Below are positions 7,613 to 14,821 of a DNA stretch of 64,000 nucleotides, one piece after another. Position 1 is the first letter of the stretch, and each line of letters starts with the position of its first letter. Location: positions 186,001-250,000 of the IMG/VR virus record IMGVR_UViG_3300043399_000877, one strand, 5' to 3'. Below the pieces are notes generated by a model that worked only from the letters and a program-made list of their open reading frames with translations, had not been told where the DNA came from and ran no database searches. Position numbers and translations under genes: made by a program.

Positions 7613-7879
7613 TTACAATCCTTCTTGTGGTTGTTGTGCTGCCAAGCCATACATAGCTTGTATTCTGGAAAGATCTTTTTGCTTTTCTTTGCGATGCATA
7701 TCATCTGCGCGGCGGGCGCGATTTATGTCACGCAATGTGAGACGAGTTTTTCTAGTGTCGTCAGATTGTACTACAGAGTCGTCATAATCGGGATCGTATC
7801 TACCATCCTCGACCGGCTCCATAGTTTCTTTATCTAAGTAATAAATCTCACGTAACTGCATAACTTTATTTATCATCAA
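7613..7879 (-). CDS. Small head-assembly-associated protein
   Basis: 88 aa, overlaps the portal stop (ATGA-type coupling); DTRKTRLTLRDINR motif. Confidence 0.7.
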   Translation of the reverse strand: MMINKVMQLREIYYLDKETMEPVEDGRYDPDYDDSVVQSDDTRKTRLTLRDINRARRADDMHRKEKQKDLSRIQAMYGLAAQQPQEGL

Positions 7880-9603
7880 ACTGGAGGAGTTGCTGCCGGT
7901 GCCGCTGCGCCACCTGCTGCGGGAGTTGGGCTTCCGACACCAGCGGCCGGAGTCATTCCCTCGGGCTCGGCTTCGGTTTCAATGTTGCCCAAGTCACTGC
8001 TCAAATCACTACCGCTTATACCAGCGTCACGCATCTGTTGTCCACTATCAACAACAGCTTCGCCCATATCGGCATTTTCTTCCTGCCACAGTCTTTCGTT
8101 TTCAGCAATTTCAGCTTCAGTCAAACCAAGGAATCGTTTTAGAGCAAAACGATTACTGATATAAGGCAACGCAGCCATGGATCCAAATGTGCTAACTCTG
8201 TTATTATCAAGTTCAGCTTGACGATAACTAGCAAAGTTTTGCGGCGGATGCATAACTAAATCAAACATGCTAAAGTCGATATTAACTCCGCGCTTGTTTA
8301 AATAGAGTTTAAATTCTTGGCTAAACGATTCCACAAACAGTGTTTGCAGGCGTTCGCAGTACTTGTTAAATCTAAGTTCTTGAATATAAGCTGTACCCAC
8401 ACGTCCATCGTTATATTGTGCAGCACTGTCGTCAGCACCGGTAGGCAAATAACTGCTGGGAATTCTTAAACCACGAACTAATTTGTTTGTAAAATAACGA
8501 AGATCGTCAATTTCACCCAAGTTAGTACCGCCTGGCAGTGTTTCAACTTTACTACCACGACCTTCAGCAGTTTGCGGGAAGAAGTAATCTTCGTTAATAC
8601 TCAATGGGTTATAGCTACTATCAATTACGTTTGTGCCACCACCGGTCTTGCTCGGAATACGACGCTGGTGTATTTCTGTCTTAACACGTTCTACGAACTG
8701 CATAGCCAAGTGACTGGGCATATTACCTACGTCGATATAAAACACACGTCTTTCCGGCGCACGTTGTACACGATATATAATAATAGCATCTTCCAGCAAT
8801 TCCTTTTGCTTGTACACTTTGAAAACAGTCTCAAGCAAGCTGTTACCAAATGGATGATTTGGATCTAGCCCTTCGCTCAAACTCAAATGTATAACATGCT
8901 CGGCATTGATTGCTATTTCATTTTGATCTTGTCCAAAACGGTTTGCGTTTGCTGGACTGGTGGTTCCAGTAGGATATCGGCTGTCAACTACTGCTGCGCC
9001 GGGTAAACCTGCGCCGGGACCGAAGCTGTTGGTTGTGTTGATAGGTGTAGCTGCGAGTTGATCAAAACTTATGTTTATGTTTCTAAAAATGTATTGCTCA
9101 GGGCGTTTACCTTCGCTTTCGTTTACAATAATTTTAGTAACGTTGCTGGGATCAACGTGCATCCATTTTTGTGTTTCAGGATCACGAATAAAGAATTGGT
9201 CGCCATACTTAAAAGCATTGCGAACAATTTTAAACATTCGAGTATCAAATTCTTGAAGTTTGCACCACTGCTTCAGATATTTTTCAATAATAGTAACTTC
9301 GGAATTGGTAGGTTGATTGTGGTACTTTACAATAAACGGACTGTCGTTTTCGTCATTTTTTTCAGTACAAAACTCAGCAAGGATGTCCAGCGCAGCGTTT
9401 ACTTCGCTGTCGGTGTCCATGGTATTGTATTGGTTGTAGCGTTCAATACGATTTGGACTACCAACATAAACATCCGGTAAGTAACTGCTGTAATTGGTTG
9501 CAGCAGGACCAACTCCGCCCAGTCGTGTTAGGCTAAATGGGCTGTAGTTGCCGCCGGCGCCGCCACTTGATGGTGTAGGAGTGAAATAACGTTTCCAACT
9601 CAT
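7876..9603 (-). CDS. gp20: Portal vertex protein
   Basis: Motifs LLEDAIIIYRVQRAPERRVFYIDVGNMP, EDYFFP...EGRGSKVETLPGG and LRIP.SYL. Confidence 0.96.
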   Translation of the reverse strand: MSWKRYFTPTPSSGGAGGNYSPFSLTRLGGVGPAATNYSSYLPDVYVGSPNRIERYNQYNTMDTDSEVNAALDILAEFCTEKNDENDSPFIVKYHNQPTNSEVTIIEKYLKQWCKLQEFDTRMFKIVRNAFKYGDQFFIRDPETQKWMHVDPSNVTKIIVNESEGKRPEQYIFRNINISFDQLAATPINTTNSFGPGAGLPGAAVVDSRYPTGTTSPANANRFGQDQNEIAINAEHVIHLSLSEGLDPNHPFGNSLLETVFKVYKQKELLEDAIIIYRVQRAPERRVFYIDVGNMPSHLAMQFVERVKTEIHQRRIPSKTGGGTNVIDSSYNPLSINEDYFFPQTAEGRGSKVETLPGGTNLGEIDDLRYFTNKLVRGLRIPSSYLPTGADDSAAQYNDGRVGTAYIQELRFNKYCERLQTLFVESFSQEFKLYLNKRGVNIDFSMFDLVMHPPQNFASYRQAELDNNRVSTFGSMAALPYISNRFALKRFLGLTEAEIAENERLWQEENADMGEAVVDSGQQMRDAGISGSDLSSDLGNIETEAEPEGMTPAAGVGSPTPAAGGAAAPAATPPV

Positions 9604-9606
9604 AGT

Positions 9607-12306
9607 TTACACACTCCTAAATAAATCACCACCCATACCGCGCATGCTGTTGAGTGTTTGCTTTTCAATTTCATTAGTTTTTCTTATTTCCGATAATACT
9701 GCTACCATAGTACTATTTAATTGAATTAAGTATTTTATCAGGTTCTCTTGGTCAGTGCTGCTTCGTCCACCAGCAGTCTGTGTTACTGGTTGTGTTTTTG
9801 CTTGCCAGTCATTAGTAAAATATCGATCTAGGAAATCACCAGCTGGGGTATTTCTAGGAACGACTGCTTCGACTCCGTGTAGTGTTGCAACACTTTGATC
9901 TCCGAAATTTTGAAAACCACTAGTACCTTTTGCAAAACCAGACCCCATTGGGTCACCCATGGGAATGTCTGGTGACTCTGGGGTTTCTGTTTGTTCTGCA
10001 CCGGGCATGTATCCGCTTCTAGTCCACCTATTGAACATGCCAGCCAAATCTGCGTCTAAATCATTTTGAATACCCATTAAGTTTGCTGCACCGTATATGG
10101 TGTCACCAAGAAGGTCGGAAGTAAAAAGCAAACTTTCAACAGTGGCATTTGTGGCTTCTAATAATTCTGACGTATCAGCCTCATAACGTTCCTCTGCCAA
10201 AGTTGCTTTTTGTTCCGGTGTTACTGCTAGCCCGGCGTTAATTCTTTTTTCAATAATTGCACCTGCTTCATCACCAAAAAGTGCGCCTGCTGTGTACTTG
10301 TTGATACTTAAAATAAGACTATCAACTAGATTTTCAAAAAATCCAGAAATAGTATTTTTAAGTTCTGTACCATTTGGGCCTTCCCAAAAGTTAATTAATT
10401 GATTTTTTGCGAGATCAAATACGCTCCAAAATCCATCAACAATTGTTTTTAAAAATCCACCGGTTCTCAACTCACTGCCAGCGGCCTTTGCTGCTGCCGC
10501 CAATGCAGGATCCACCGCATTTTCACCATATCCCACATCAGCAACTTCACCATAAAAGAAATCTTTTAAAACTGGACCTATGTAGTTGGTTATTGCATCT
10601 TTAACTAAATTAAAAGTACTTACAAATCCTTCATAAATTACATCAAAGATTGTTTTTTCACCATTAAAAACTTGCTCAAAAGTAGTATAAATGTTTTCAA
10701 AAAGCCCACCAACTCTTTCGGTAGTCCTGCTGTCGGGGTCGCCCCCGGTTGTAACTTTTTTTCCAAAAAAGAAATCAATTAGATTATTTGTAACACGTTT
10801 TACGGTATCGAAAAACGCATCCATATTTTTTTCAAAATCTGGATCGCTTAAAAATTCAGTAAACCAATCTATAGCTTTGGTTACTGTGCCGTCTTTTCCA
10901 AAAAAGTAATTAAACAATCGATCGAGTCCAGATGAAAATCCATCTATACTTCCGTTATCACTTATCAATGTTAGAAGTTTTTCACCGAGTCGTTCGAGAG
11001 AACTAAATGCTTCGCTTTTTATAAATGCCGATATTAATCGTCCGCGAGCACTTTGTACGGTTTGTTCGAAATTACCAAATAGAGTAGTAAGTTTACTTCT
11101 TTGATCGGCTTCGAGTTTGTATTGTTCGGTGTTTATTTCAAGAACTTTGTTAAGTTCAAAAAGACTATCCAACATTGTGGCATACTCGGCAGTTATGCCA
11201 CCAGCTTGTCGCATTGCTGCTATCTGTTCTGTGCTGAATTGTTTCTGTAATCGATCTATCTGAGGTTTAAATTGTTTTAATTGATCTATAAAATCAACTT
11301 CGCTAATTTCACCACGAAACGCACGTTGCATAAGCGGACCTAAACCTTTTATTTGTGTCTGCATCAACACACCTAAGTCAGTTTGTGCAAGTCCGTCCAT
11401 AATATCTTCGAATCCGCTAGCAAGCCCGGGCATGCTGGAACGAACAAATGTCAATACTCCTTCAAGATTCTTTCTGTTTTCACCCTCGAGAGAATTAATC
11501 TGTCGTCGTAGTCCGGCATCTTGCTGCAATTGTGCCATTTCTTGGGCAAGCTGTTCACGTTGTTTTCCTGTGAGTTTTGCCAATTTATCCAATTGCATCA
11601 TGTATTCGCTACTGGATTCCATTAAACTTCGATCACGTAGTTCAATTCGTCTACCGGACATAAGTTGTGCATCCAAGTAAGTTGCAAGACTGCTGTTTAT
11701 TTCGTTAATTGTAAAACCCATGCCCATGAGTTCTTGACCGATCTTACTTGTGCGAAGATTTCTAGAAAAAATACCAAACTGTTTTGCGCCTTCGCTAGTG
11801 GTACCGCCCAGCTTTGCAAATAGTTGAGAATTGTTTCTAACAAGTGATGTAAAATCGTCAAATGCTACTTCACTTTCAGCAGCAGCCAGTCTCATATCAA
11901 AAAGACTGTTGTTAAAACTTGCACCGTACGTACTGAGATCACGGAATGCATCGGTCAACCCTTCGGTATAGCGTATTAGTTCCCCCATAGCCGTACCGGC
12001 ACCCAAAACCATTTCGGCAAAATCGCCCATGCGATCACCGCCGGTAATGAGTTCTTTACCGAAATAACCCAATCCCTTGACGCTGTCGGTTATACCGCTT
12101 ATAAAACCTTTGCGCGCTGCACCTTCATCCCTGATAGTTCGTGTATTGGCTTCTCTAGCTATTCTTTCTAATCGCGAAGCTTGATCTGTACCGTTGCGGC
12201 TGCGGCTAAGGGTGTCAACCAGTGCAGAAAGAGTGGCTTCACTTGCTACGCCAAACTTGCCACCTACATTTTTAATTTCTACTTCGTCAACCATTACCGA
12301 ATCCAA
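9607..12306 (-). CDS. Tape-measure-like protein
   Basis: 899 aa, Ala/Gly-rich helical, LAKLTGKQREQL segment, C-terminal G.F.(A)KGT.GF...G......LHGVEAVVP motif typical of tail-length determinants; sits next to the gp26-like gene. Confidence 0.75.
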   Translation of the reverse strand: MDSVMVDEVEIKNVGGKFGVASEATLSALVDTLSRSRNGTDQASRLERIAREANTRTIRDEGAARKGFISGITDSVKGLGYFGKELITGGDRMGDFAEMVLGAGTAMGELIRYTEGLTDAFRDLSTYGASFNNSLFDMRLAAAESEVAFDDFTSLVRNNSQLFAKLGGTTSEGAKQFGIFSRNLRTSKIGQELMGMGFTINEINSSLATYLDAQLMSGRRIELRDRSLMESSSEYMMQLDKLAKLTGKQREQLAQEMAQLQQDAGLRRQINSLEGENRKNLEGVLTFVRSSMPGLASGFEDIMDGLAQTDLGVLMQTQIKGLGPLMQRAFRGEISEVDFIDQLKQFKPQIDRLQKQFSTEQIAAMRQAGGITAEYATMLDSLFELNKVLEINTEQYKLEADQRSKLTTLFGNFEQTVQSARGRLISAFIKSEAFSSLERLGEKLLTLISDNGSIDGFSSGLDRLFNYFFGKDGTVTKAIDWFTEFLSDPDFEKNMDAFFDTVKRVTNNLIDFFFGKKVTTGGDPDSRTTERVGGLFENIYTTFEQVFNGEKTIFDVIYEGFVSTFNLVKDAITNYIGPVLKDFFYGEVADVGYGENAVDPALAAAAKAAGSELRTGGFLKTIVDGFWSVFDLAKNQLINFWEGPNGTELKNTISGFFENLVDSLILSINKYTAGALFGDEAGAIIEKRINAGLAVTPEQKATLAEERYEADTSELLEATNATVESLLFTSDLLGDTIYGAANLMGIQNDLDADLAGMFNRWTRSGYMPGAEQTETPESPDIPMGDPMGSGFAKGTSGFQNFGDQSVATLHGVEAVVPRNTPAGDFLDRYFTNDWQAKTQPVTQTAGGRSSTDQENLIKYLIQLNSTMVAVLSEIRKTNEIEKQTLNSMRGMGGDLFRSV

Positions 12307-12352
12307 TCTTTAAAATGATGTATATATACAATATATTTATCGGAGATTATAT

Positions 12353-13207
12353 ATGCATAATTCTGCCAATCCACTGTCAAGACATTTTAGACAACCCAAG
12401 TTATATATTAAATTACCCAGTAACGGAAATTTTTATCCGGATGGTGCCATTGATCGCACCACCAATAATGAATACCCGGTTTACAGTATGACAGCCAAGG
12501 ATGAATTAAGATTTAAAACTCCGGATGCATTGCTTAACGGACAAGCGACGGTGGATGTCGTTCAAAGTTGTATTCCAAATATTCGTGATGCTTGGTCAAT
12601 ACCCAGTATCGACGTTGACGCCATATTGATTGCTATAAGAATAGCAACTTATGGTGAAAAGATGGATATAACCACCACACTGCCCAACACCGAGATAGAA
12701 AAAACTTTTGAAGTTGATTTACGTCATTTATTGGATAACTTAGCCATTGCTGAATACGATAACGTTATTAAAATCGGAGATTTTACTATCGAAATAGCGC
12801 CGTTAAACTATCGTTCTTTTACAGAAACTGCTATGAAAACATTTGAAGAGCGAAGATTATTTCGAACTATAAACGACAGCGATCTTTCTGAAGAAGAAAA
12901 AATCAGTCGTTTTAACGAAAGTTTCAATCGTATAACCGAAATGAACATACGAATTGTTACTCGCAGCGTAGTATCTGTAAGATACAAATCTGAAGCGCCG
13001 GTGTTTGATCCAGATTACATAAACGAATTCTTTGACAACATTGACAAGGATGTGTTTAAGGCTATCATAAAACATGTTGAGGCCCAACGTGACCGATTCC
13101 GTATACCACCGTTAGAGGCTACCACTACCGAAGAAGAACAAGCTGCTGGTGCTCCGGATAAGTTTTCAATACCGGTTAACTTCGATCAATCAAATTTTTT
13201 CGCCTAA
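12353..13207 (+). CDS. gp26: Baseplate hub / tail-assembly chaperone (gp26-like)
   Basis: NPL..HFRQPKLYIKLPS.G.FY, VYSMTAKDEL..KTPDALLNG, D.DAILIAIRIATYG and C-terminal NFF motifs. Confidence 0.8.
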   Translation: MHNSANPLSRHFRQPKLYIKLPSNGNFYPDGAIDRTTNNEYPVYSMTAKDELRFKTPDALLNGQATVDVVQSCIPNIRDAWSIPSIDVDAILIAIRIATYGEKMDITTTLPNTEIEKTFEVDLRHLLDNLAIAEYDNVIKIGDFTIEIAPLNYRSFTETAMKTFEERRLFRTINDSDLSEEEKISRFNESFNRITEMNIRIVTRSVVSVRYKSEAPVFDPDYINEFFDNIDKDVFKAIIKHVEAQRDRFRIPPLEATTTEEEQAAGAPDKFSIPVNFDQSNFFA

Positions 13208-13431
13208 GGATCTCTAATTGGTCAGTTGACCAGATACTGGCCGAAGTAGAGGTCCTGGAGCAGCAAACCAAGCAGATGAAGTACAACCTCAGCAAGTTGT
13301 GCTGGCACATGCGCGGCGGGCTCAGCTTGACCGAAGCCTATGAGCTGAGCCCGGATGATCGGGAAGTAATGGGTAGATTGATCAAAGACAACTTTGAAGT
13401 GGCCAAGAAAACCGGCCAACCCTATTGGTAA
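13195..13431 (+). CDS. gp51-like ORF in the -1 frame, probably reached by frameshift from the gp26-like gene
   Basis: Not in the ORF track. The frame is open from the T-run at 13195 to TAA at 13429-13431: FFRLRISNWSVDQILAEVEVLEQQTKQMKYNLSKLCWHMRGGLSLTEAYELSPDDREVMGRLIKDNFEVAKKTGQPYW. No start codon at its 5' end. Confidence 0.75.
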   Translation, partial: FFRLRISNWSVDQILAEVEVLEQQTKQMKYNLSKLCWHMRGGLSLTEAYELSPDDREVMGRLIKDNFEVAKKTGQPYW

Positions 13432-14004
13432 TTAGGGATTACCGGTGGGTGGGGCGCCAGTACCACCCAACATGGCCAACAGCGCAGCCTTCTGTTGAGG
13501 GGTCATTCCGGCAACCGCGCTGGCTATATTAGGTGGGACCTGCTGTGTGCGGCGACTTCTAAAATTACCAGCATTTCTAGTTACCGGAGCAGCAAATGCA
13601 CCGCGCTTGACAGTTGTAGCAGCACCAGCAGCACCCTGGGTAGCTTTGAGCACTATCTGATCTATTTCTTTATTGCTCAACGGAGCATTTGCCGGTGTTC
13701 CTGCCGGTCTAACAGTGCGCATTATGTTTCTGACATTGTCACCGTATCCCTTTTGGGTAAGGAATGTGGTCATCTGTTGTGGAGTCAGTGCATTACGTGC
13801 TATACCGGCTCTTCCCATGAACTGACTGAGCTCTGCGCGAACTTTGTTTGCTTCATCACCGGCCTGAAGAGCACCGGTTGCTCTAGCACCTATCTGACCT
13901 GGGACCTTACTAGCAATCTTTTGACCCATTTTTTTGAACATACCCACCGGTGCTTCGGTTATGTCTGTGTCCGTTGATTCACTTAGAACTTCATATACTT
14001 TCAT
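13432..14004 (-). CDS. Hypothetical protein, possibly an internal head protein
   Basis: 190 aa, basic and Ala/Gly-rich. N-terminus MKVYEVLSES...ITEA; GAGG SD; late promoter GATAAATA around 14027-14032. Confidence 0.7.
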   Translation of the reverse strand: MKVYEVLSESTDTDITEAPVGMFKKMGQKIASKVPGQIGARATGALQAGDEANKVRAELSQFMGRAGIARNALTPQQMTTFLTQKGYGDNVRNIMRTVRPAGTPANAPLSNKEIDQIVLKATQGAAGAATTVKRGAFAAPVTRNAGNFRSRRTQQVPPNIASAVAGMTPQQKAALLAMLGGTGAPPTGNP

Positions 14005-14034
14005 GTTTAGATTCCCTCATTTGTTTTATTTATC

Positions 14035-14155
14035 CGGATATTATCAGGATGAGCTTGACGCTCATCCGTTCGTTTGTTCATATATACTCACTGACGTTCG
14101 TATATATTCACAACCTCACTGATGCTTCGCATAGCTAATATCCGATAAATTTATC
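14035..14155. repeat. Nested inverted-repeat (multi-hairpin) cluster
   Basis: CGGATATTA/TAATATCCG outer stem; GGATGAGC/GCTCATCC and ATATATAC/GTATATAT inner hairpins; palindrome GATAAATTTATC at 14144-14155. Confidence 0.8.
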
Positions 14156-14625
14156 AAGATGTCGATAAGATACTACGAGACTCAATGTCGAATGTTTCAT
14201 GTAGATCTAATTCAGTCAGACGGAACCGGTTTACGGTTCCGTCATCTTGAGCTTCATGTGAGTCTCACCCAGCCAAGACATGGAAGCAGGTATTTCTGTT
14301 TATACACCAACTCCAGGGACTCTAACCTTTTCCCTACCTGCGTCGACCCGGCAAATGCGTCATAAACAATGCACTCGATGCGTTGTTTGTGCTGCACTCA
14401 CCGTCCTTGAGCTCGTTCCTCAATCCTCAAGGTGTTTAGGAGTGTGCGGTGTGTTCGAACGACAGCAAGCATCCTACGCCAATACCTAACTCACTTCCAT
14501 TTTTCAGGATACAACGAATTCCTCGAGGGGGAGGGTATCAGAGTGTCACGTGTGCAGCCACGGTTTAACTGCTTTTTCCACAGCGGTATTATCTATCCGG
14601 CCCGCCAACCTTATGTGCTGTTATA
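14154..14625 (-). ncRNA. Candidate large (~470 nt) structured non-coding RNA
   Basis: GC-richer than the flanks, no credible ORF, at least six perfect 6-10 bp stems, including two interleaved 8-bp stems that would form a pseudoknot. Strand is inferred from the upstream operon. Confidence 0.65.
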
Positions 14626-14821
14626 TTGCGCCTTTGGGTAACCAGGTGACCCATTTGCCACCACAGGTTTTGCATATAATTTTGCCTGCATGTGGGCCTG
14701 GTACATCAAGTACAACGTCCCACTCGTGATTTTCGTGCTTGCCTAAGTTTATTTCAGTGTAATCCGGTAGCCTAGTTTGTGGCCTGTATCTTTTTCTAGC
14801 TGTTAGGTCATAATCATCCAT
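14621..14821 (-). CDS. Small zinc-finger-like protein
   Basis: 66 aa with PH.GKII-CKTC-GGKWVTWL (H + CxxC); coupled to the resolvase stop. Confidence 0.7.
   Translation of the reverse strand: MDDYDLTARKRYRPQTRLPDYTEINLGKHENHEWDVVLDVPGPHAGKIICKTCGGKWVTWLPKGAI

What the first reader, a model, noticed from the sequence alone, without database searches (positions are those of the whole stretch)
13181..13431. Probable programmed -1 frameshift joining gp26-like and gp51-like ORFs
The gp26-like gene ends ...AAT TTT TTC GCC TAA and contains the canonical X XXY YYZ heptamer T TTT TTC (13195-13201). The -1 frame stays open for a further 76 codons with a gp51-like sequence (CWHMRGGLSLTEAYELS..DRE) and has no start codon at its 5' end. 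A short hairpin, TGGTC-AGTT-GACCA, follows about 17 nt later. This mirrors the lambda gpG/gpGT tail-chaperone frameshift. I am not aware of it being a standard annotation for T4-like gp26/gp51. Here the pair is transcribed away from the tape-measure gene rather than upstream of it.
Basis: partly seen in the sequence, partly recalled or inferred. Interest (0 to 1): 0.7.

Follow-up and report, generated by a model that had tools for sequence, protein, structure and literature searches.

The report
Conserved frameshift in jumbo-phage hub-assembly gene
A giant freshwater phage, and every relative examined, most likely makes a short and a long version of its T4 gp26/gp51-type baseplate-hub assembly protein from one gene by a programmed -1 ribosomal slip that none of the 15 GenBank records inspected annotates.

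Summary
The gp26-like gene (12353-13207, Pfam PF12322) carries an in-phase T TTT TTC at 13195-13201. The -1 frame then runs 76 codons to 13431.

- **Conservation:** 42 of 42 distinct related loci keep an in-phase T TTT TTY and a 69-91 codon -1 ORF (61 metagenomic and isolate loci in all, including RaK2, 121Q, PA5oct, GAP32 and Atu_ph07). In the 38 scored, the preceding codon encodes eight different amino acids but always ends in T.
- **Coding from the slip site:** the -1 peptide aligns from its first codon. Many loci have no start codon there, and PA5oct has none at all.
- **Stimulator:** a stem with compensatory changes starts 5 nt downstream, at 13207-13256.
- **Natural control:** a sister lineage encodes the short and long forms as two tandem paralogues. 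The long one is an in-frame fusion whose junction matches the predicted frameshift product, and there the heptamer is mostly lost.
- **T4 parallel:** gp26 and gp51 are likewise PF12322 paralogues, and gp51 has an extra C-terminal domain. Homology of the window's extension to that domain is only weakly indicated.

No protein-level evidence exists. No paper found and none of the 15 GenBank records inspected describes it.

The parts
12353..13207 (+). gp26/gp51-family (PF12322) hub-assembly gene. The 0-frame product is 284 aa and ends ...FDQSNFFA, with stop TAA at 13205-13207.
   Evidence: It is the only PF12322 gene in the 381,886-bp genome.
13195..13201 (+). Slippery heptamer T TTT TTC in X XXY YYZ phase. 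This is the proposed site of the tandem tRNA-Phe -1 slip.
   Evidence: in phase in 42 of 42 distinct loci. In the 38 scored, the preceding codon is always NNT although it encodes 8 different amino acids.
13207..13256 (+). Downstream stimulatory stem-loop. The outer stem pairs 13207-13219 with 13244-13256, 5 nt after the heptamer, and encloses an inner hairpin.
   Evidence: 13195-13270 folds at -29.5 kcal/mol, z = -3.68; 93.9% of cells paired in the 7 closest loci, with 4 pairs showing compensatory double changes; lowest mean folding energy of the whole -600 to +160 nt scan over 33 loci.
13201..13431 (+). Trans-frame (-1) extension of 76 codons plus stop TAA at 13429-13431. The predicted frameshift product is 283 + 76 = 359 aa with junction ...QSNFF|RLRIS... 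The extension folds as a four-helix domain.
   Evidence: codon-position periodicity from the first codon. AF2 pLDDT 92.7; natural in-frame fusions.
13276..13278 (+). First ATG in the -1 frame, the start required by the rival 'independent 51-aa ORF' reading.
   Evidence: this Met is not conserved (mostly I, L or F in relatives), and 24 conserved codons lie upstream of it.
9607..12306 (-). Divergently transcribed 899-aa virion protein, the probable tape-measure or gp29 analogue (context, inferred). The T4-type portal gene lies behind it at 7876-9603.
   Evidence: only weak PHROG hits (virion structural 2.7e-4, tape measure 0.029); the RaK2 homologue is annotated as tape-measure-like. Portal_T4 at 7.9e-111.

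Best explanation
**What it is.** One gene of the T4 gp26/gp51 hub-assembly family most likely yields two proteins through a programmed -1 ribosomal frameshift.

**How it works (inferred from anatomy and comparison).**
1. Ribosomes translating 12353-13207 reach T TTT TTC (13195-13201) with tRNA-Phe on UUU in the P site and on UUC in the A site.
2. A stem-loop starting 5 nt downstream (13207-13256) resists unwinding.
3. A fraction of ribosomes slips back one base, re-pairs on UUU UUU and continues in the -1 frame for 76 codons. This gives a 359-aa protein: the PF12322 body plus a four-helix C-terminal domain.
4. The remaining ribosomes read one more codon and stop at TAA 13205, giving the 284-aa body alone.

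**What it is for (inferred by homology).** A T4 review lists gp26 and gp51 as hub assembly chaperones. The gene sits next to the tape-measure-like gene. By these two facts, the two forms act together in building the central hub and tape-measure complex. The frameshift efficiency would fix their ratio, in the manner of lambda gpG/gpGT.

**Shown versus inferred.** The sequence anatomy and its conservation are shown here. Slippage itself, its efficiency and the function are inferred.
For: 1. **Heptamer conservation.** All 54 loci first examined (33 distinct), plus RaK2, GAP32, Munch, SCTP-2, Hallingskeid, WPEC3 and CBB, have T TTT TTC in phase. RsoM2USA and Xoo-sp13 have T TTT TTT. In the 38 loci scored, the preceding codon is AAT, ACT, AGT, GAT, CGT, CAT, GTT or GCT, so always NNT. 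This holds even in genomes where TTT makes up only 25-36% of Phe codons.
2. **The 0-frame stop moves; the -1 ORF does not.** The 0-frame stop lies 1 to 11 codons after the heptamer. The -1 ORF is always 69-91 codons. The +1 frame closes within 1-38 codons of that stop, mostly within 15.
3. **Coding from the slip site.** The -1 peptide aligns from its first codon (R-x-R/K-I/L-L...). In most loci it reaches the CWYMRGG motif 36 codons on without an indel. Entropy by codon position over the first 24 codons is 0.82 (position 2), 1.20 (position 1) and 1.62 (position 3).
4. **Missing start codons.** 8 of 28 loci have no ATG, GTG or TTG up to codon 24. PA5oct has none in the whole ORF. Only 7 of 39 have an ATG in codons 1-4.
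5. **Downstream structure.** The 70-nt window just after the heptamer has the lowest mean folding energy of a -600 to +160 scan: -16.9 against roughly -8 to -13 kcal/mol over most other offsets. For this window, see the parts list.
6. **Natural fusions.** A profile search found at least 18 proteins of 319-351 aa with the domain at their extreme C-terminus. Their junction, D-x4-F-R-x-K/R-I/L, superposes residue for residue on the predicted product D-QSN-F-F-R-L-R-I. One of them (P0037) aligns over 98% of its length to Atu_ph07 and Phosso in two pieces, the expected sign of a frame change.
7. **Natural control.** In that lineage, at the same portal/tape-measure-like locus, a short paralogue ending ...DFF or ...NFF precedes the long one. 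The short paralogue has lost the heptamer in 4 of 5 cases, for example GAC TTC TTT and AAT TTC TTT.
8. **Single gene here.** The window's genome has only one PF12322 gene.
9. **Not an assembly error.** Independent assemblies, including a run labelled RNA-seq, cover the T-run with no indel.
Against: - There is no protein, ribosome-profiling or reporter evidence for any member of the family.
- The two Phe residues are invariant at protein level, so part of the T-run is explained by the protein. Only the third positions of the preceding codon and of the first Phe codon are free.
- 7 of 39 loci have an ATG overlapping or adjoining the 0-frame stop (ATGA or TAATG). That would allow translational coupling, and annotators have called small ORFs there.
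- The position of the 3' arm of the stem differs between clades. In about a third of loci the downstream window is not among the most stable. RNAalifold found no single consensus across 11 loci.
- My stem was derived from the same sequences it was tested on.
- The efficiency of U UUU UUC in the unknown host is not known.
- The run data are contigs, which cannot exclude rare RNA-level insertions.
Confidence: 0.82

Rival explanations
1. The downstream ORF is an independent small gene. It would be translated by termination-reinitiation or coupling at the gp26 stop, or from the internal ATG at 13276. No fusion protein is made.
For: Atu_ph07, Phosso, 121Q and some metagenomic loci have an ATG overlapping the stop (ATGA or TAATG) in the -1 frame. 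Annotators and gene callers list about 70-aa ORFs there: 6238 clusters.
Against: - Only 7 of 39 loci have such an ATG. The window has CTA at that position.
- 8 of 28 loci have no canonical start up to codon 24, and PA5oct has none at all.
- The Met at 13276 is not conserved, and 24 conserved codons with coding periodicity lie upstream of it.
- This reading explains neither the invariant in-phase heptamer with forced NNT nor the in-frame fusions with the same junction.
Confidence: 0.08
2. The long form arises by transcriptional slippage. RNA polymerase would add one U in the T-run, and normal translation of the edited mRNA would then give the same fusion protein.
For: A one-base insertion in the run gives exactly the same product. 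RsoM2USA has a run of 9 T and Xoo-sp13 a run of 7 T, lengths at which slippage becomes plausible. Slippage is known for other recoded genes (my own knowledge).
Against: - The run is only 6 T in 40 of 42 distinct loci and is capped by a conserved C. Selection for slippage would favour longer runs.
- TTC is kept as the second Phe codon in 36 of the 38 loci scored, although TTT is the commoner Phe codon (about 70% on average).
- A structured element with covariation placed 5 nt downstream is the hallmark of ribosomal, not transcriptional, slippage.
- A contig from a run labelled RNA-seq crosses the site without an insertion, though contigs hide rare variants.
Confidence: 0.06
3. The -1 ORF is not expressed. 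On this reading the pattern is a leftover of an ancestral fusion gene broken by a one-base deletion.
For: In-frame fusions exist in a sister lineage, so a one-base difference separates the two states.
Against: A dead remnant would not stay open for 69-91 codons, without indels in most loci, and with coding periodicity. Nor would it stay recognisably conserved across loci whose trans-frame peptides are only 13-66% identical to the window's.
Confidence: 0.01

Closest known systems
Lambda gpG/gpGT and the conserved -1 frameshift of tail assembly chaperone genes in long-tailed phages, including P2 E/E+E' (slippery T TTT TTG as I recall it; not checked here)
   Same: - One gene gives a short product and a C-terminally extended product that share the N-terminal body.
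- The shift is a -1 slip on an X XXY YYZ heptamer close to the end of the short ORF.
- The gene lies next to the tape-measure gene.
- The presumed role is to set a fixed ratio of two assembly factors.
   Different: - It is a different protein family: PF12322, with no tail-assembly-chaperone Pfam hit.
- The gene is transcribed away from the tape-measure-like gene rather than lying just upstream of it.
- The body is about 280 aa, which as I recall is much larger than typical tail assembly chaperones.
- Binding partners are unknown.
T4 gp26 and gp51 (hub assembly chaperones; review PMC3004832)
   Same: - The window protein belongs to the same Pfam family, PF12322.
- T4 also has a short member (gp26, 208 aa) and a long member (gp51, 249 aa) with an extra C-terminal domain, Gp51_C PF28602. 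Both match the full PF12322 profile.
- Both T4 genes flank the hub/gp29 cluster.
   Different: - T4 uses two separate, divergently transcribed genes and no frameshift.
- Homology between the 76-aa extension and Gp51_C is only weakly indicated.
- The window protein lacks the Cys pairs present in T4 gp51 and in many relatives.
Metagenomic jumbo-phage lineage with tandem short and long PF12322 paralogues (L063, L066, L070, L071)
   Same: - Same locus: portal, tape-measure-like gene, then the PF12322 gene or genes, then the recombination nuclease genes.
- The short paralogue is 29% identical to the window's 0-frame product over its full length and ends ...DFF.
- The long paralogue carries the same C-terminal domain.
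   Different: - There are two genes instead of one gene plus recoding.
- The domain is fused in frame through non-slippery codons.
- The heptamer is lost in 4 of 5 short paralogues.
T4 gene 26 internal product gp26'
   Same: The T4 record annotates a second, nested product from the same hub-assembly gene. Producing two related proteins from this gene therefore has a precedent.
   Different: gp26' is an N-terminally truncated form made by internal initiation (at an AUU codon as I recall; not checked here). It is not a C-terminal extension made by frameshifting.

Membership tests
Canonical -1 programmed ribosomal frameshift site | An X XXY YYZ heptamer in the 0-frame phase that allows both tRNAs to re-pair | tested here: met
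   T TTT TTC at 13195-13201 is in phase. tRNA-Phe can re-pair on UUU UUU (established wobble rules).
Canonical -1 programmed ribosomal frameshift site | The heptamer is conserved at nucleotide level beyond what the protein requires | tested here: met
   42 of 42 distinct loci keep it. In the 38 scored, the preceding codon encodes 8 different amino acids and is always NNT. The naive product of codon-usage probabilities is 2e-20, though the loci are not independent. It is lost in 4 of 5 short paralogues where a separate long gene exists.
Canonical -1 programmed ribosomal frameshift site | A stimulatory RNA structure 5-9 nt downstream | tested here: met
   The stem starts 5 nt after the heptamer. 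Fold energy is -29.5 kcal/mol with z = -3.68. It is 93.9% paired with 4 compensatory pairs in the 7 closest loci. It marks the folding-energy minimum over 33 loci. The 3' arm is not conserved across all clades.
Canonical -1 programmed ribosomal frameshift site | The -1 ORF is under coding selection from the slip site and lacks its own start | tested here: met
Canonical -1 programmed ribosomal frameshift site | The trans-frame protein is detected and its efficiency measured | not testable with these tools
   This needs mass spectrometry, a western blot or a reporter. The run data here are contigs only.
T4 gp26/gp51 baseplate hub assembly proteins (PF12322) | Match to the family profile above the curated cut-off | tested here: met
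   45.5 bits against a 24.5-bit cut-off, E 9.6e-12. phrog_150 at 7e-14. The AF2 model of the fused relative hits T4-like hub assembly proteins in BFVD down to E 3.9e-20.
T4 gp26/gp51 baseplate hub assembly proteins (PF12322) | Role in hub assembly, and absence from or transient presence in the virion | not testable with these tools
   The PA5oct record marks the neighbouring 798-aa protein, but not the gp26-like protein, as detected by ESI-MS/MS. The numbering in the CBB paper was ambiguous.
Gp51_C domain (PF28602), tested for the 76-aa extension | Significant sequence or fold match to the C-terminal domain of T4 gp51 | tested here: inconclusive
   hhalign gives a co-linear hit of extension residues 38-74 to gp51 221-257 at E 1e-3, probability 21%. 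A richer profile gives E 9e-3, probability 5%. A home-made gp51 C-terminal HMM gives a best E of 0.005 in 284 sequences. The Atlas finds a similar 68-aa cluster, score 0.90, with PF28602 in 11% of members. No PF28602 is on record for the top 120 small ORFs or for the five fused proteins whose records were looked up. Foldseek with the domain alone finds no gp51.
Lambda-type tail assembly chaperones (gpG/gpGT families) | Sequence or fold membership in a known tail-assembly-chaperone family | tested here: not met
   No tail-assembly-chaperone Pfam or PHROG hit. No PDB fold match. One 'tape measure chaperone' appears only at E 6.7.
Lambda-type tail assembly chaperones (gpG/gpGT families) | Location immediately upstream of, and co-oriented with, the tape-measure gene | tested here: not met
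   The gene is adjacent to the tape-measure-like gene at 9607-12306 but transcribed in the opposite direction.

The most novel reading that the evidence does not exclude
The gp26/gp51 family may be the T4-superfamily counterpart of the G/GT tail assembly chaperones. On this reading the short-plus-long pair is the conserved functional unit. It is produced by a -1 frameshift in RaK2/121Q/PA5oct/Atu_ph07-type jumbo phages and by duplicated genes in a sister lineage and in T4 itself, where gp26 would be the short form and gp51 the long form with Gp51_C as the extension. That would close the long-noted gap that T4-like phages seem to lack the otherwise near-universal chaperone frameshift. It would also assign a concrete role to T4 gp51, described as 'essential, function unknown'.
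Probability: 0.35. Interest if true: 0.78.

Novelty: new variant of a known kind. Interest (0 to 1): 0.62.

Why it matters
- **Annotation.** It would add a recoding site that none of the 15 GenBank records inspected annotates. These include the well-studied jumbo phages RaK2, 121Q, PA5oct, GAP32, CBB and Atu_ph07. There the downstream part is called a truncated 'hypothetical protein' or is missed entirely. A family of several thousand metagenomic small ORFs would be affected too.
- **Evolution.** It gives a clean natural experiment. The same two proteins are made by a frameshift in one lineage and by gene duplication in another, and the slippery site decays where it is no longer needed.
- **T4 biology.** It gives a testable handle on the poorly understood T4 hub assembly factors gp26 and gp51, because it suggests that a short-plus-long pair at a set ratio is what matters.
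- **Practical use.** Phage-therapy and genome-engineering work on these phages should treat the heptamer and the downstream stem as functional sequence.

Tried and rejected
- **No nucleotide relatives.** blastn of 12000-14100 against 50,697 phage records found nothing.
- **No known RNA genes.** Rfam at gathering threshold and tRNA scans of the whole window found nothing.
- **Single-sequence comparison failed.** hhalign of the extension profile against single T4 gp51 and gp26 sequences gave only spurious or insignificant hits.
- **No one structure fits all clades.** RNAalifold on 11 loci gave no consensus structure because the clades place the 3' arm differently. I then tested a named stem on the 7 closest loci.
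- **No solved structure.** PDB sequence searches with the tape-measure-like protein and the gp26-like profile, and a PDB fold search with the fused model, found nothing.
- **Domain-only fold search.** It returned only small uncharacterised phage proteins of the same kind and no gp51.
- **Proteome papers.** The CBB and PA5oct papers could not settle whether the protein is in virions.
- **Read laying.** Only assembler contigs were available, so rare RNA-level insertions could not be assessed.
- **Promoters and terminators.** The consensus scan of 12200-14800 was at chance level.
- **Not run.** I did not run complex prediction, because binding of the extension to the body would not separate the fusion reading from the independent-gene reading.
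- **Literature.** Eight completed full-text searches on gp26/gp51, baseplate hub, frameshift, slippage, RaK2, jumbo phage and PRFect found no description of this site.
Full report
**Observation**

The window is bases 186001-250000 of a 381,886-bp virus record rated complete. The sequence is held by freshwater metagenome runs.

- The ORF 12353-13207 (284 aa) matches Pfam PF12322 'T4_baseplate' at E 9.6e-12, 45.5 bits against a 24.5-bit cut-off. It also matches PHROG 150 'baseplate hub'.
- It ends AAT TTT TTC GCC TAA. T TTT TTC lies at 13195-13201 in X XXY YYZ phase.
- The -1 frame is open for 76 codons from the C of the heptamer to the stop at 13429-13431. The first canonical start in that frame is the ATG at 13276.
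- The heptamer alone means little: the window holds 48 copies against about 40 expected.

**What kind of phage this is**

tblastn places the gene among jumbo myoviruses of the RaK2/121Q/PBECO4, GAP32/CBB, PA5oct, Atu_ph07/Phosso, SCTP-2, RsoM2USA and Xoo-sp13 groups.

The locus is syntenic with theirs. A T4-type portal (7876-9603, Portal_T4 at 7.9e-111) and an 899-aa tape-measure-like protein (9607-12306) lie on the minus strand. The gp26-like gene and its -1 ORF diverge from them on the plus strand. Further on lie gp46/gp47-like nuclease genes.

**Comparative test of the frameshift**

I fetched 49 IMG/VR loci at 34-61% identity and 15 isolate records.

- **Heptamer.** Every locus has an in-phase T TTT TTC. 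In RsoM2USA and Xoo-sp13 it is T TTT TTT. That is 42 of 42 distinct loci.
- **Preceding codon.** In the 38 loci scored it encodes N, T, S, D, R, H, V or A and always ends in T. TTT TTC is kept even where TTT is the minority Phe codon.
- **Frames.** The 0-frame stop lies 1, 2, 3, 4, 6, 10 or 11 codons downstream. The -1 frame is always open for 69-91 codons. The +1 frame closes within 1-38 codons, mostly within 15.
- **Coding signal.** The -1 peptides align from their first residue (R-x-R/K-I/L-L). In most loci they reach CWYMRGG 36 codons later without an indel. Entropy over the first 24 codons follows the coding pattern: position 2 lowest, position 3 highest.
- **Starts.** 8 of 28 loci have no ATG, GTG or TTG before codon 24. 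PA5oct has none anywhere in the ORF. Only 7 of 39 have an ATG in codons 1-4. The Met at 13276 is not conserved.

**RNA structure**

Across 33 loci, the 70 nt immediately after the heptamer have the lowest mean folding energy of a -600 to +160 nt scan. The value is -16.9 kcal/mol, against roughly -8 to -13 over most other offsets.

In the window, 13195-13270 folds at -29.5 kcal/mol with z = -3.68.

For the 7 closest loci I tested a 14-pair stem, alignment columns 12-25 with 50-63. In the window this is 13207-13219 with 13244-13256, starting 5 nt after the heptamer.

- 93.9% of cells are paired.
- Four pairs show compensatory double changes.
- The stem beats all slid controls.

More distant clades also have strong stems beginning 3-8 nt after the heptamer, but with differently placed 3' arms.

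**Natural fusions and a two-gene sister lineage**

A profile of the extension, searched against 1.8 billion representative proteins, gave 538 hits. Most are small ORFs of 40-100 aa. At least 18 of the best 150 are proteins of 319-351 aa with the domain at the extreme C-terminus.

Their junction...LD-x4-F-R-x-K/R-I/L-L/I..., superposes residue for residue on the predicted product ...FD-QSN-F-F-R-L-R-I-S.... It is encoded by non-slippery codons.

One of these fusions (P0037) aligns over 98% of its length to Atu_ph07 and Phosso in two tblastn pieces, the expected sign of a frame change.

Their contigs, one of 327 kb, show the same portal/tape-measure-like locus with two tandem PF12322 genes.

- The short gene (281-297 aa) is 29% identical to the window's 0-frame product over its full length and ends ...DFF...SFF or ...NFF.
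- The long gene (335-346 aa) carries the domain in frame.
- In the short paralogues the heptamer is gone in 4 of 5. The one survivor (L066) runs into a -1 stop after a single codon.

Where a separate long gene exists, the constraint on the slippery site is relaxed. The window's own genome has only one PF12322 gene.

**Link to T4**

T4 gp26 (208 aa) and gp51 (249 aa) both match PF12322 end to end, so they are paralogues. gp51 homologues carry an additional C-terminal domain, PF28602, named Gp51_C in Pfam 38.1. A T4 review lists both as hub assembly chaperones and calls gp51 essential with unknown function (PMC3004832).

Whether the 76-aa extension is homologous to Gp51_C is unresolved.

- hhalign gives the same co-linear match each time: extension 38-74 to gp51 221-257. 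It scores only E 1e-3 at probability 21%, and E 9e-3 at 5% with a richer profile.
- A home-made gp51 C-terminal HMM reaches E 0.005 at best.
- The ESM Atlas lists a similar 68-aa viral cluster at score 0.90 in which 11% of members carry PF28602.
- Foldseek with the domain alone finds no gp51.

**Structure**

- The fused relative P0037 folds confidently as one body: pLDDT 89, pTM 0.85. Its four-helix C-terminal domain spans residues 262-337.
- The window's own extension gives the same four-helix pattern at pLDDT 92.7.
- The fold matches T4-like hub assembly proteins in BFVD down to E 3.9e-20 and nothing in the PDB. This family therefore has no solved structure.

**Rival readings**

- **Independent small gene.** Translational coupling is possible only in the minority of loci with an ATG at the stop. 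It explains neither the forced NNT-TTT-TTC nor the fusions.
- **Transcriptional slippage.** It would give the same protein. It is disfavoured by a run of only six T capped by a conserved C, and by the structured element 5 nt downstream. Contigs from independent runs, one labelled RNA-seq, cross the site without an indel, but contigs cannot exclude rare variants.
- **Dead remnant.** This is excluded by the coding conservation.

**Novelty and verdict**

None of the 15 GenBank records inspected has a joined CDS. The downstream part is annotated as a truncated hypothetical protein or not at all. Eight full-text literature searches found no description of this site.

A -1 frameshift in tail assembly genes is a known kind of system. 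This case differs in three ways: it sits in a different protein family (gp26/gp51), the gene has a different orientation relative to the tape-measure gene, and there is a natural two-gene counterpart.

I rate it a new variant of a known kind. My confidence that the frameshift is real is about 0.8. All evidence so far is comparative and computational.

Noticed in passing
window 13200-14000: A patch of 50-55% G+C lies in a region otherwise about 32-46%. It covers the trans-frame extension and the convergent 190-aa ORF 13432-14004 on the minus strand. That ORF has no Pfam or PHROG match, and its stop codon abuts the extension's stop with no spacer.
   Followed up: partly
window 14005-14620: About 600 nt between two minus-strand genes hold no convincing ORF, only ORFs under 70 aa on either strand. 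G+C is about 49%. There is no Rfam or tRNA hit, and one terminator-like hairpin at 14047-14067.
   Followed up: no
window 12353-13207 compared with A5 rows such as L031, L034-L037, L041-L043 and L047-L048: Many relatives, the fused long paralogues and T4 gp51 have two Cys pairs (CxxC near residue 110 and CxxC or CxxxC near residue 260), as in a zinc ribbon. The window protein and its closest relatives have lost all four.
   Followed up: partly
L066:1689-1704: The short paralogue of one two-gene phage still carries an in-phase T TTT TTC, but the -1 frame stops after one codon. It looks like a relic, which suggests the two-gene state descends from a frameshifting ancestor.
   Followed up: partly
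L071:1-2709: The T4-type portal gene of a two-gene-lineage phage (963 aa) carries Intein_splicing and faint HNH hits between two Portal_T4 segments. This points to an intein inside the portal protein.
   Followed up: no
L059:2268-2276 (RsoM2USA) and L060:2352-2358 (Xoo-sp13): These two phages have longer T-runs at the slip site, 9 T and 7 T, with T TTT TTT instead of T TTT TTC. In them transcriptional slippage could add to ribosomal frameshifting.
   Followed up: no
L054:7803-8429 (T4 gene 26): The T4 record annotates a nested second product, gp26', from the same hub-assembly gene. That is a different way of making two related proteins from this gene.
   Followed up: no
L055:2313-2540 (RaK2), L059:2247-2519 (RsoM2USA), L053:3337-3570 (PA5oct): In these GenBank records the -1 ORF is not annotated at all. 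In others (Atu_ph07 AUZ95433, Munch, GAP32, CBB, Hallingskeid) the annotated small ORF begins at a start codon downstream of the slip site. It therefore omits the first conserved codons of the extension.
   Followed up: yes
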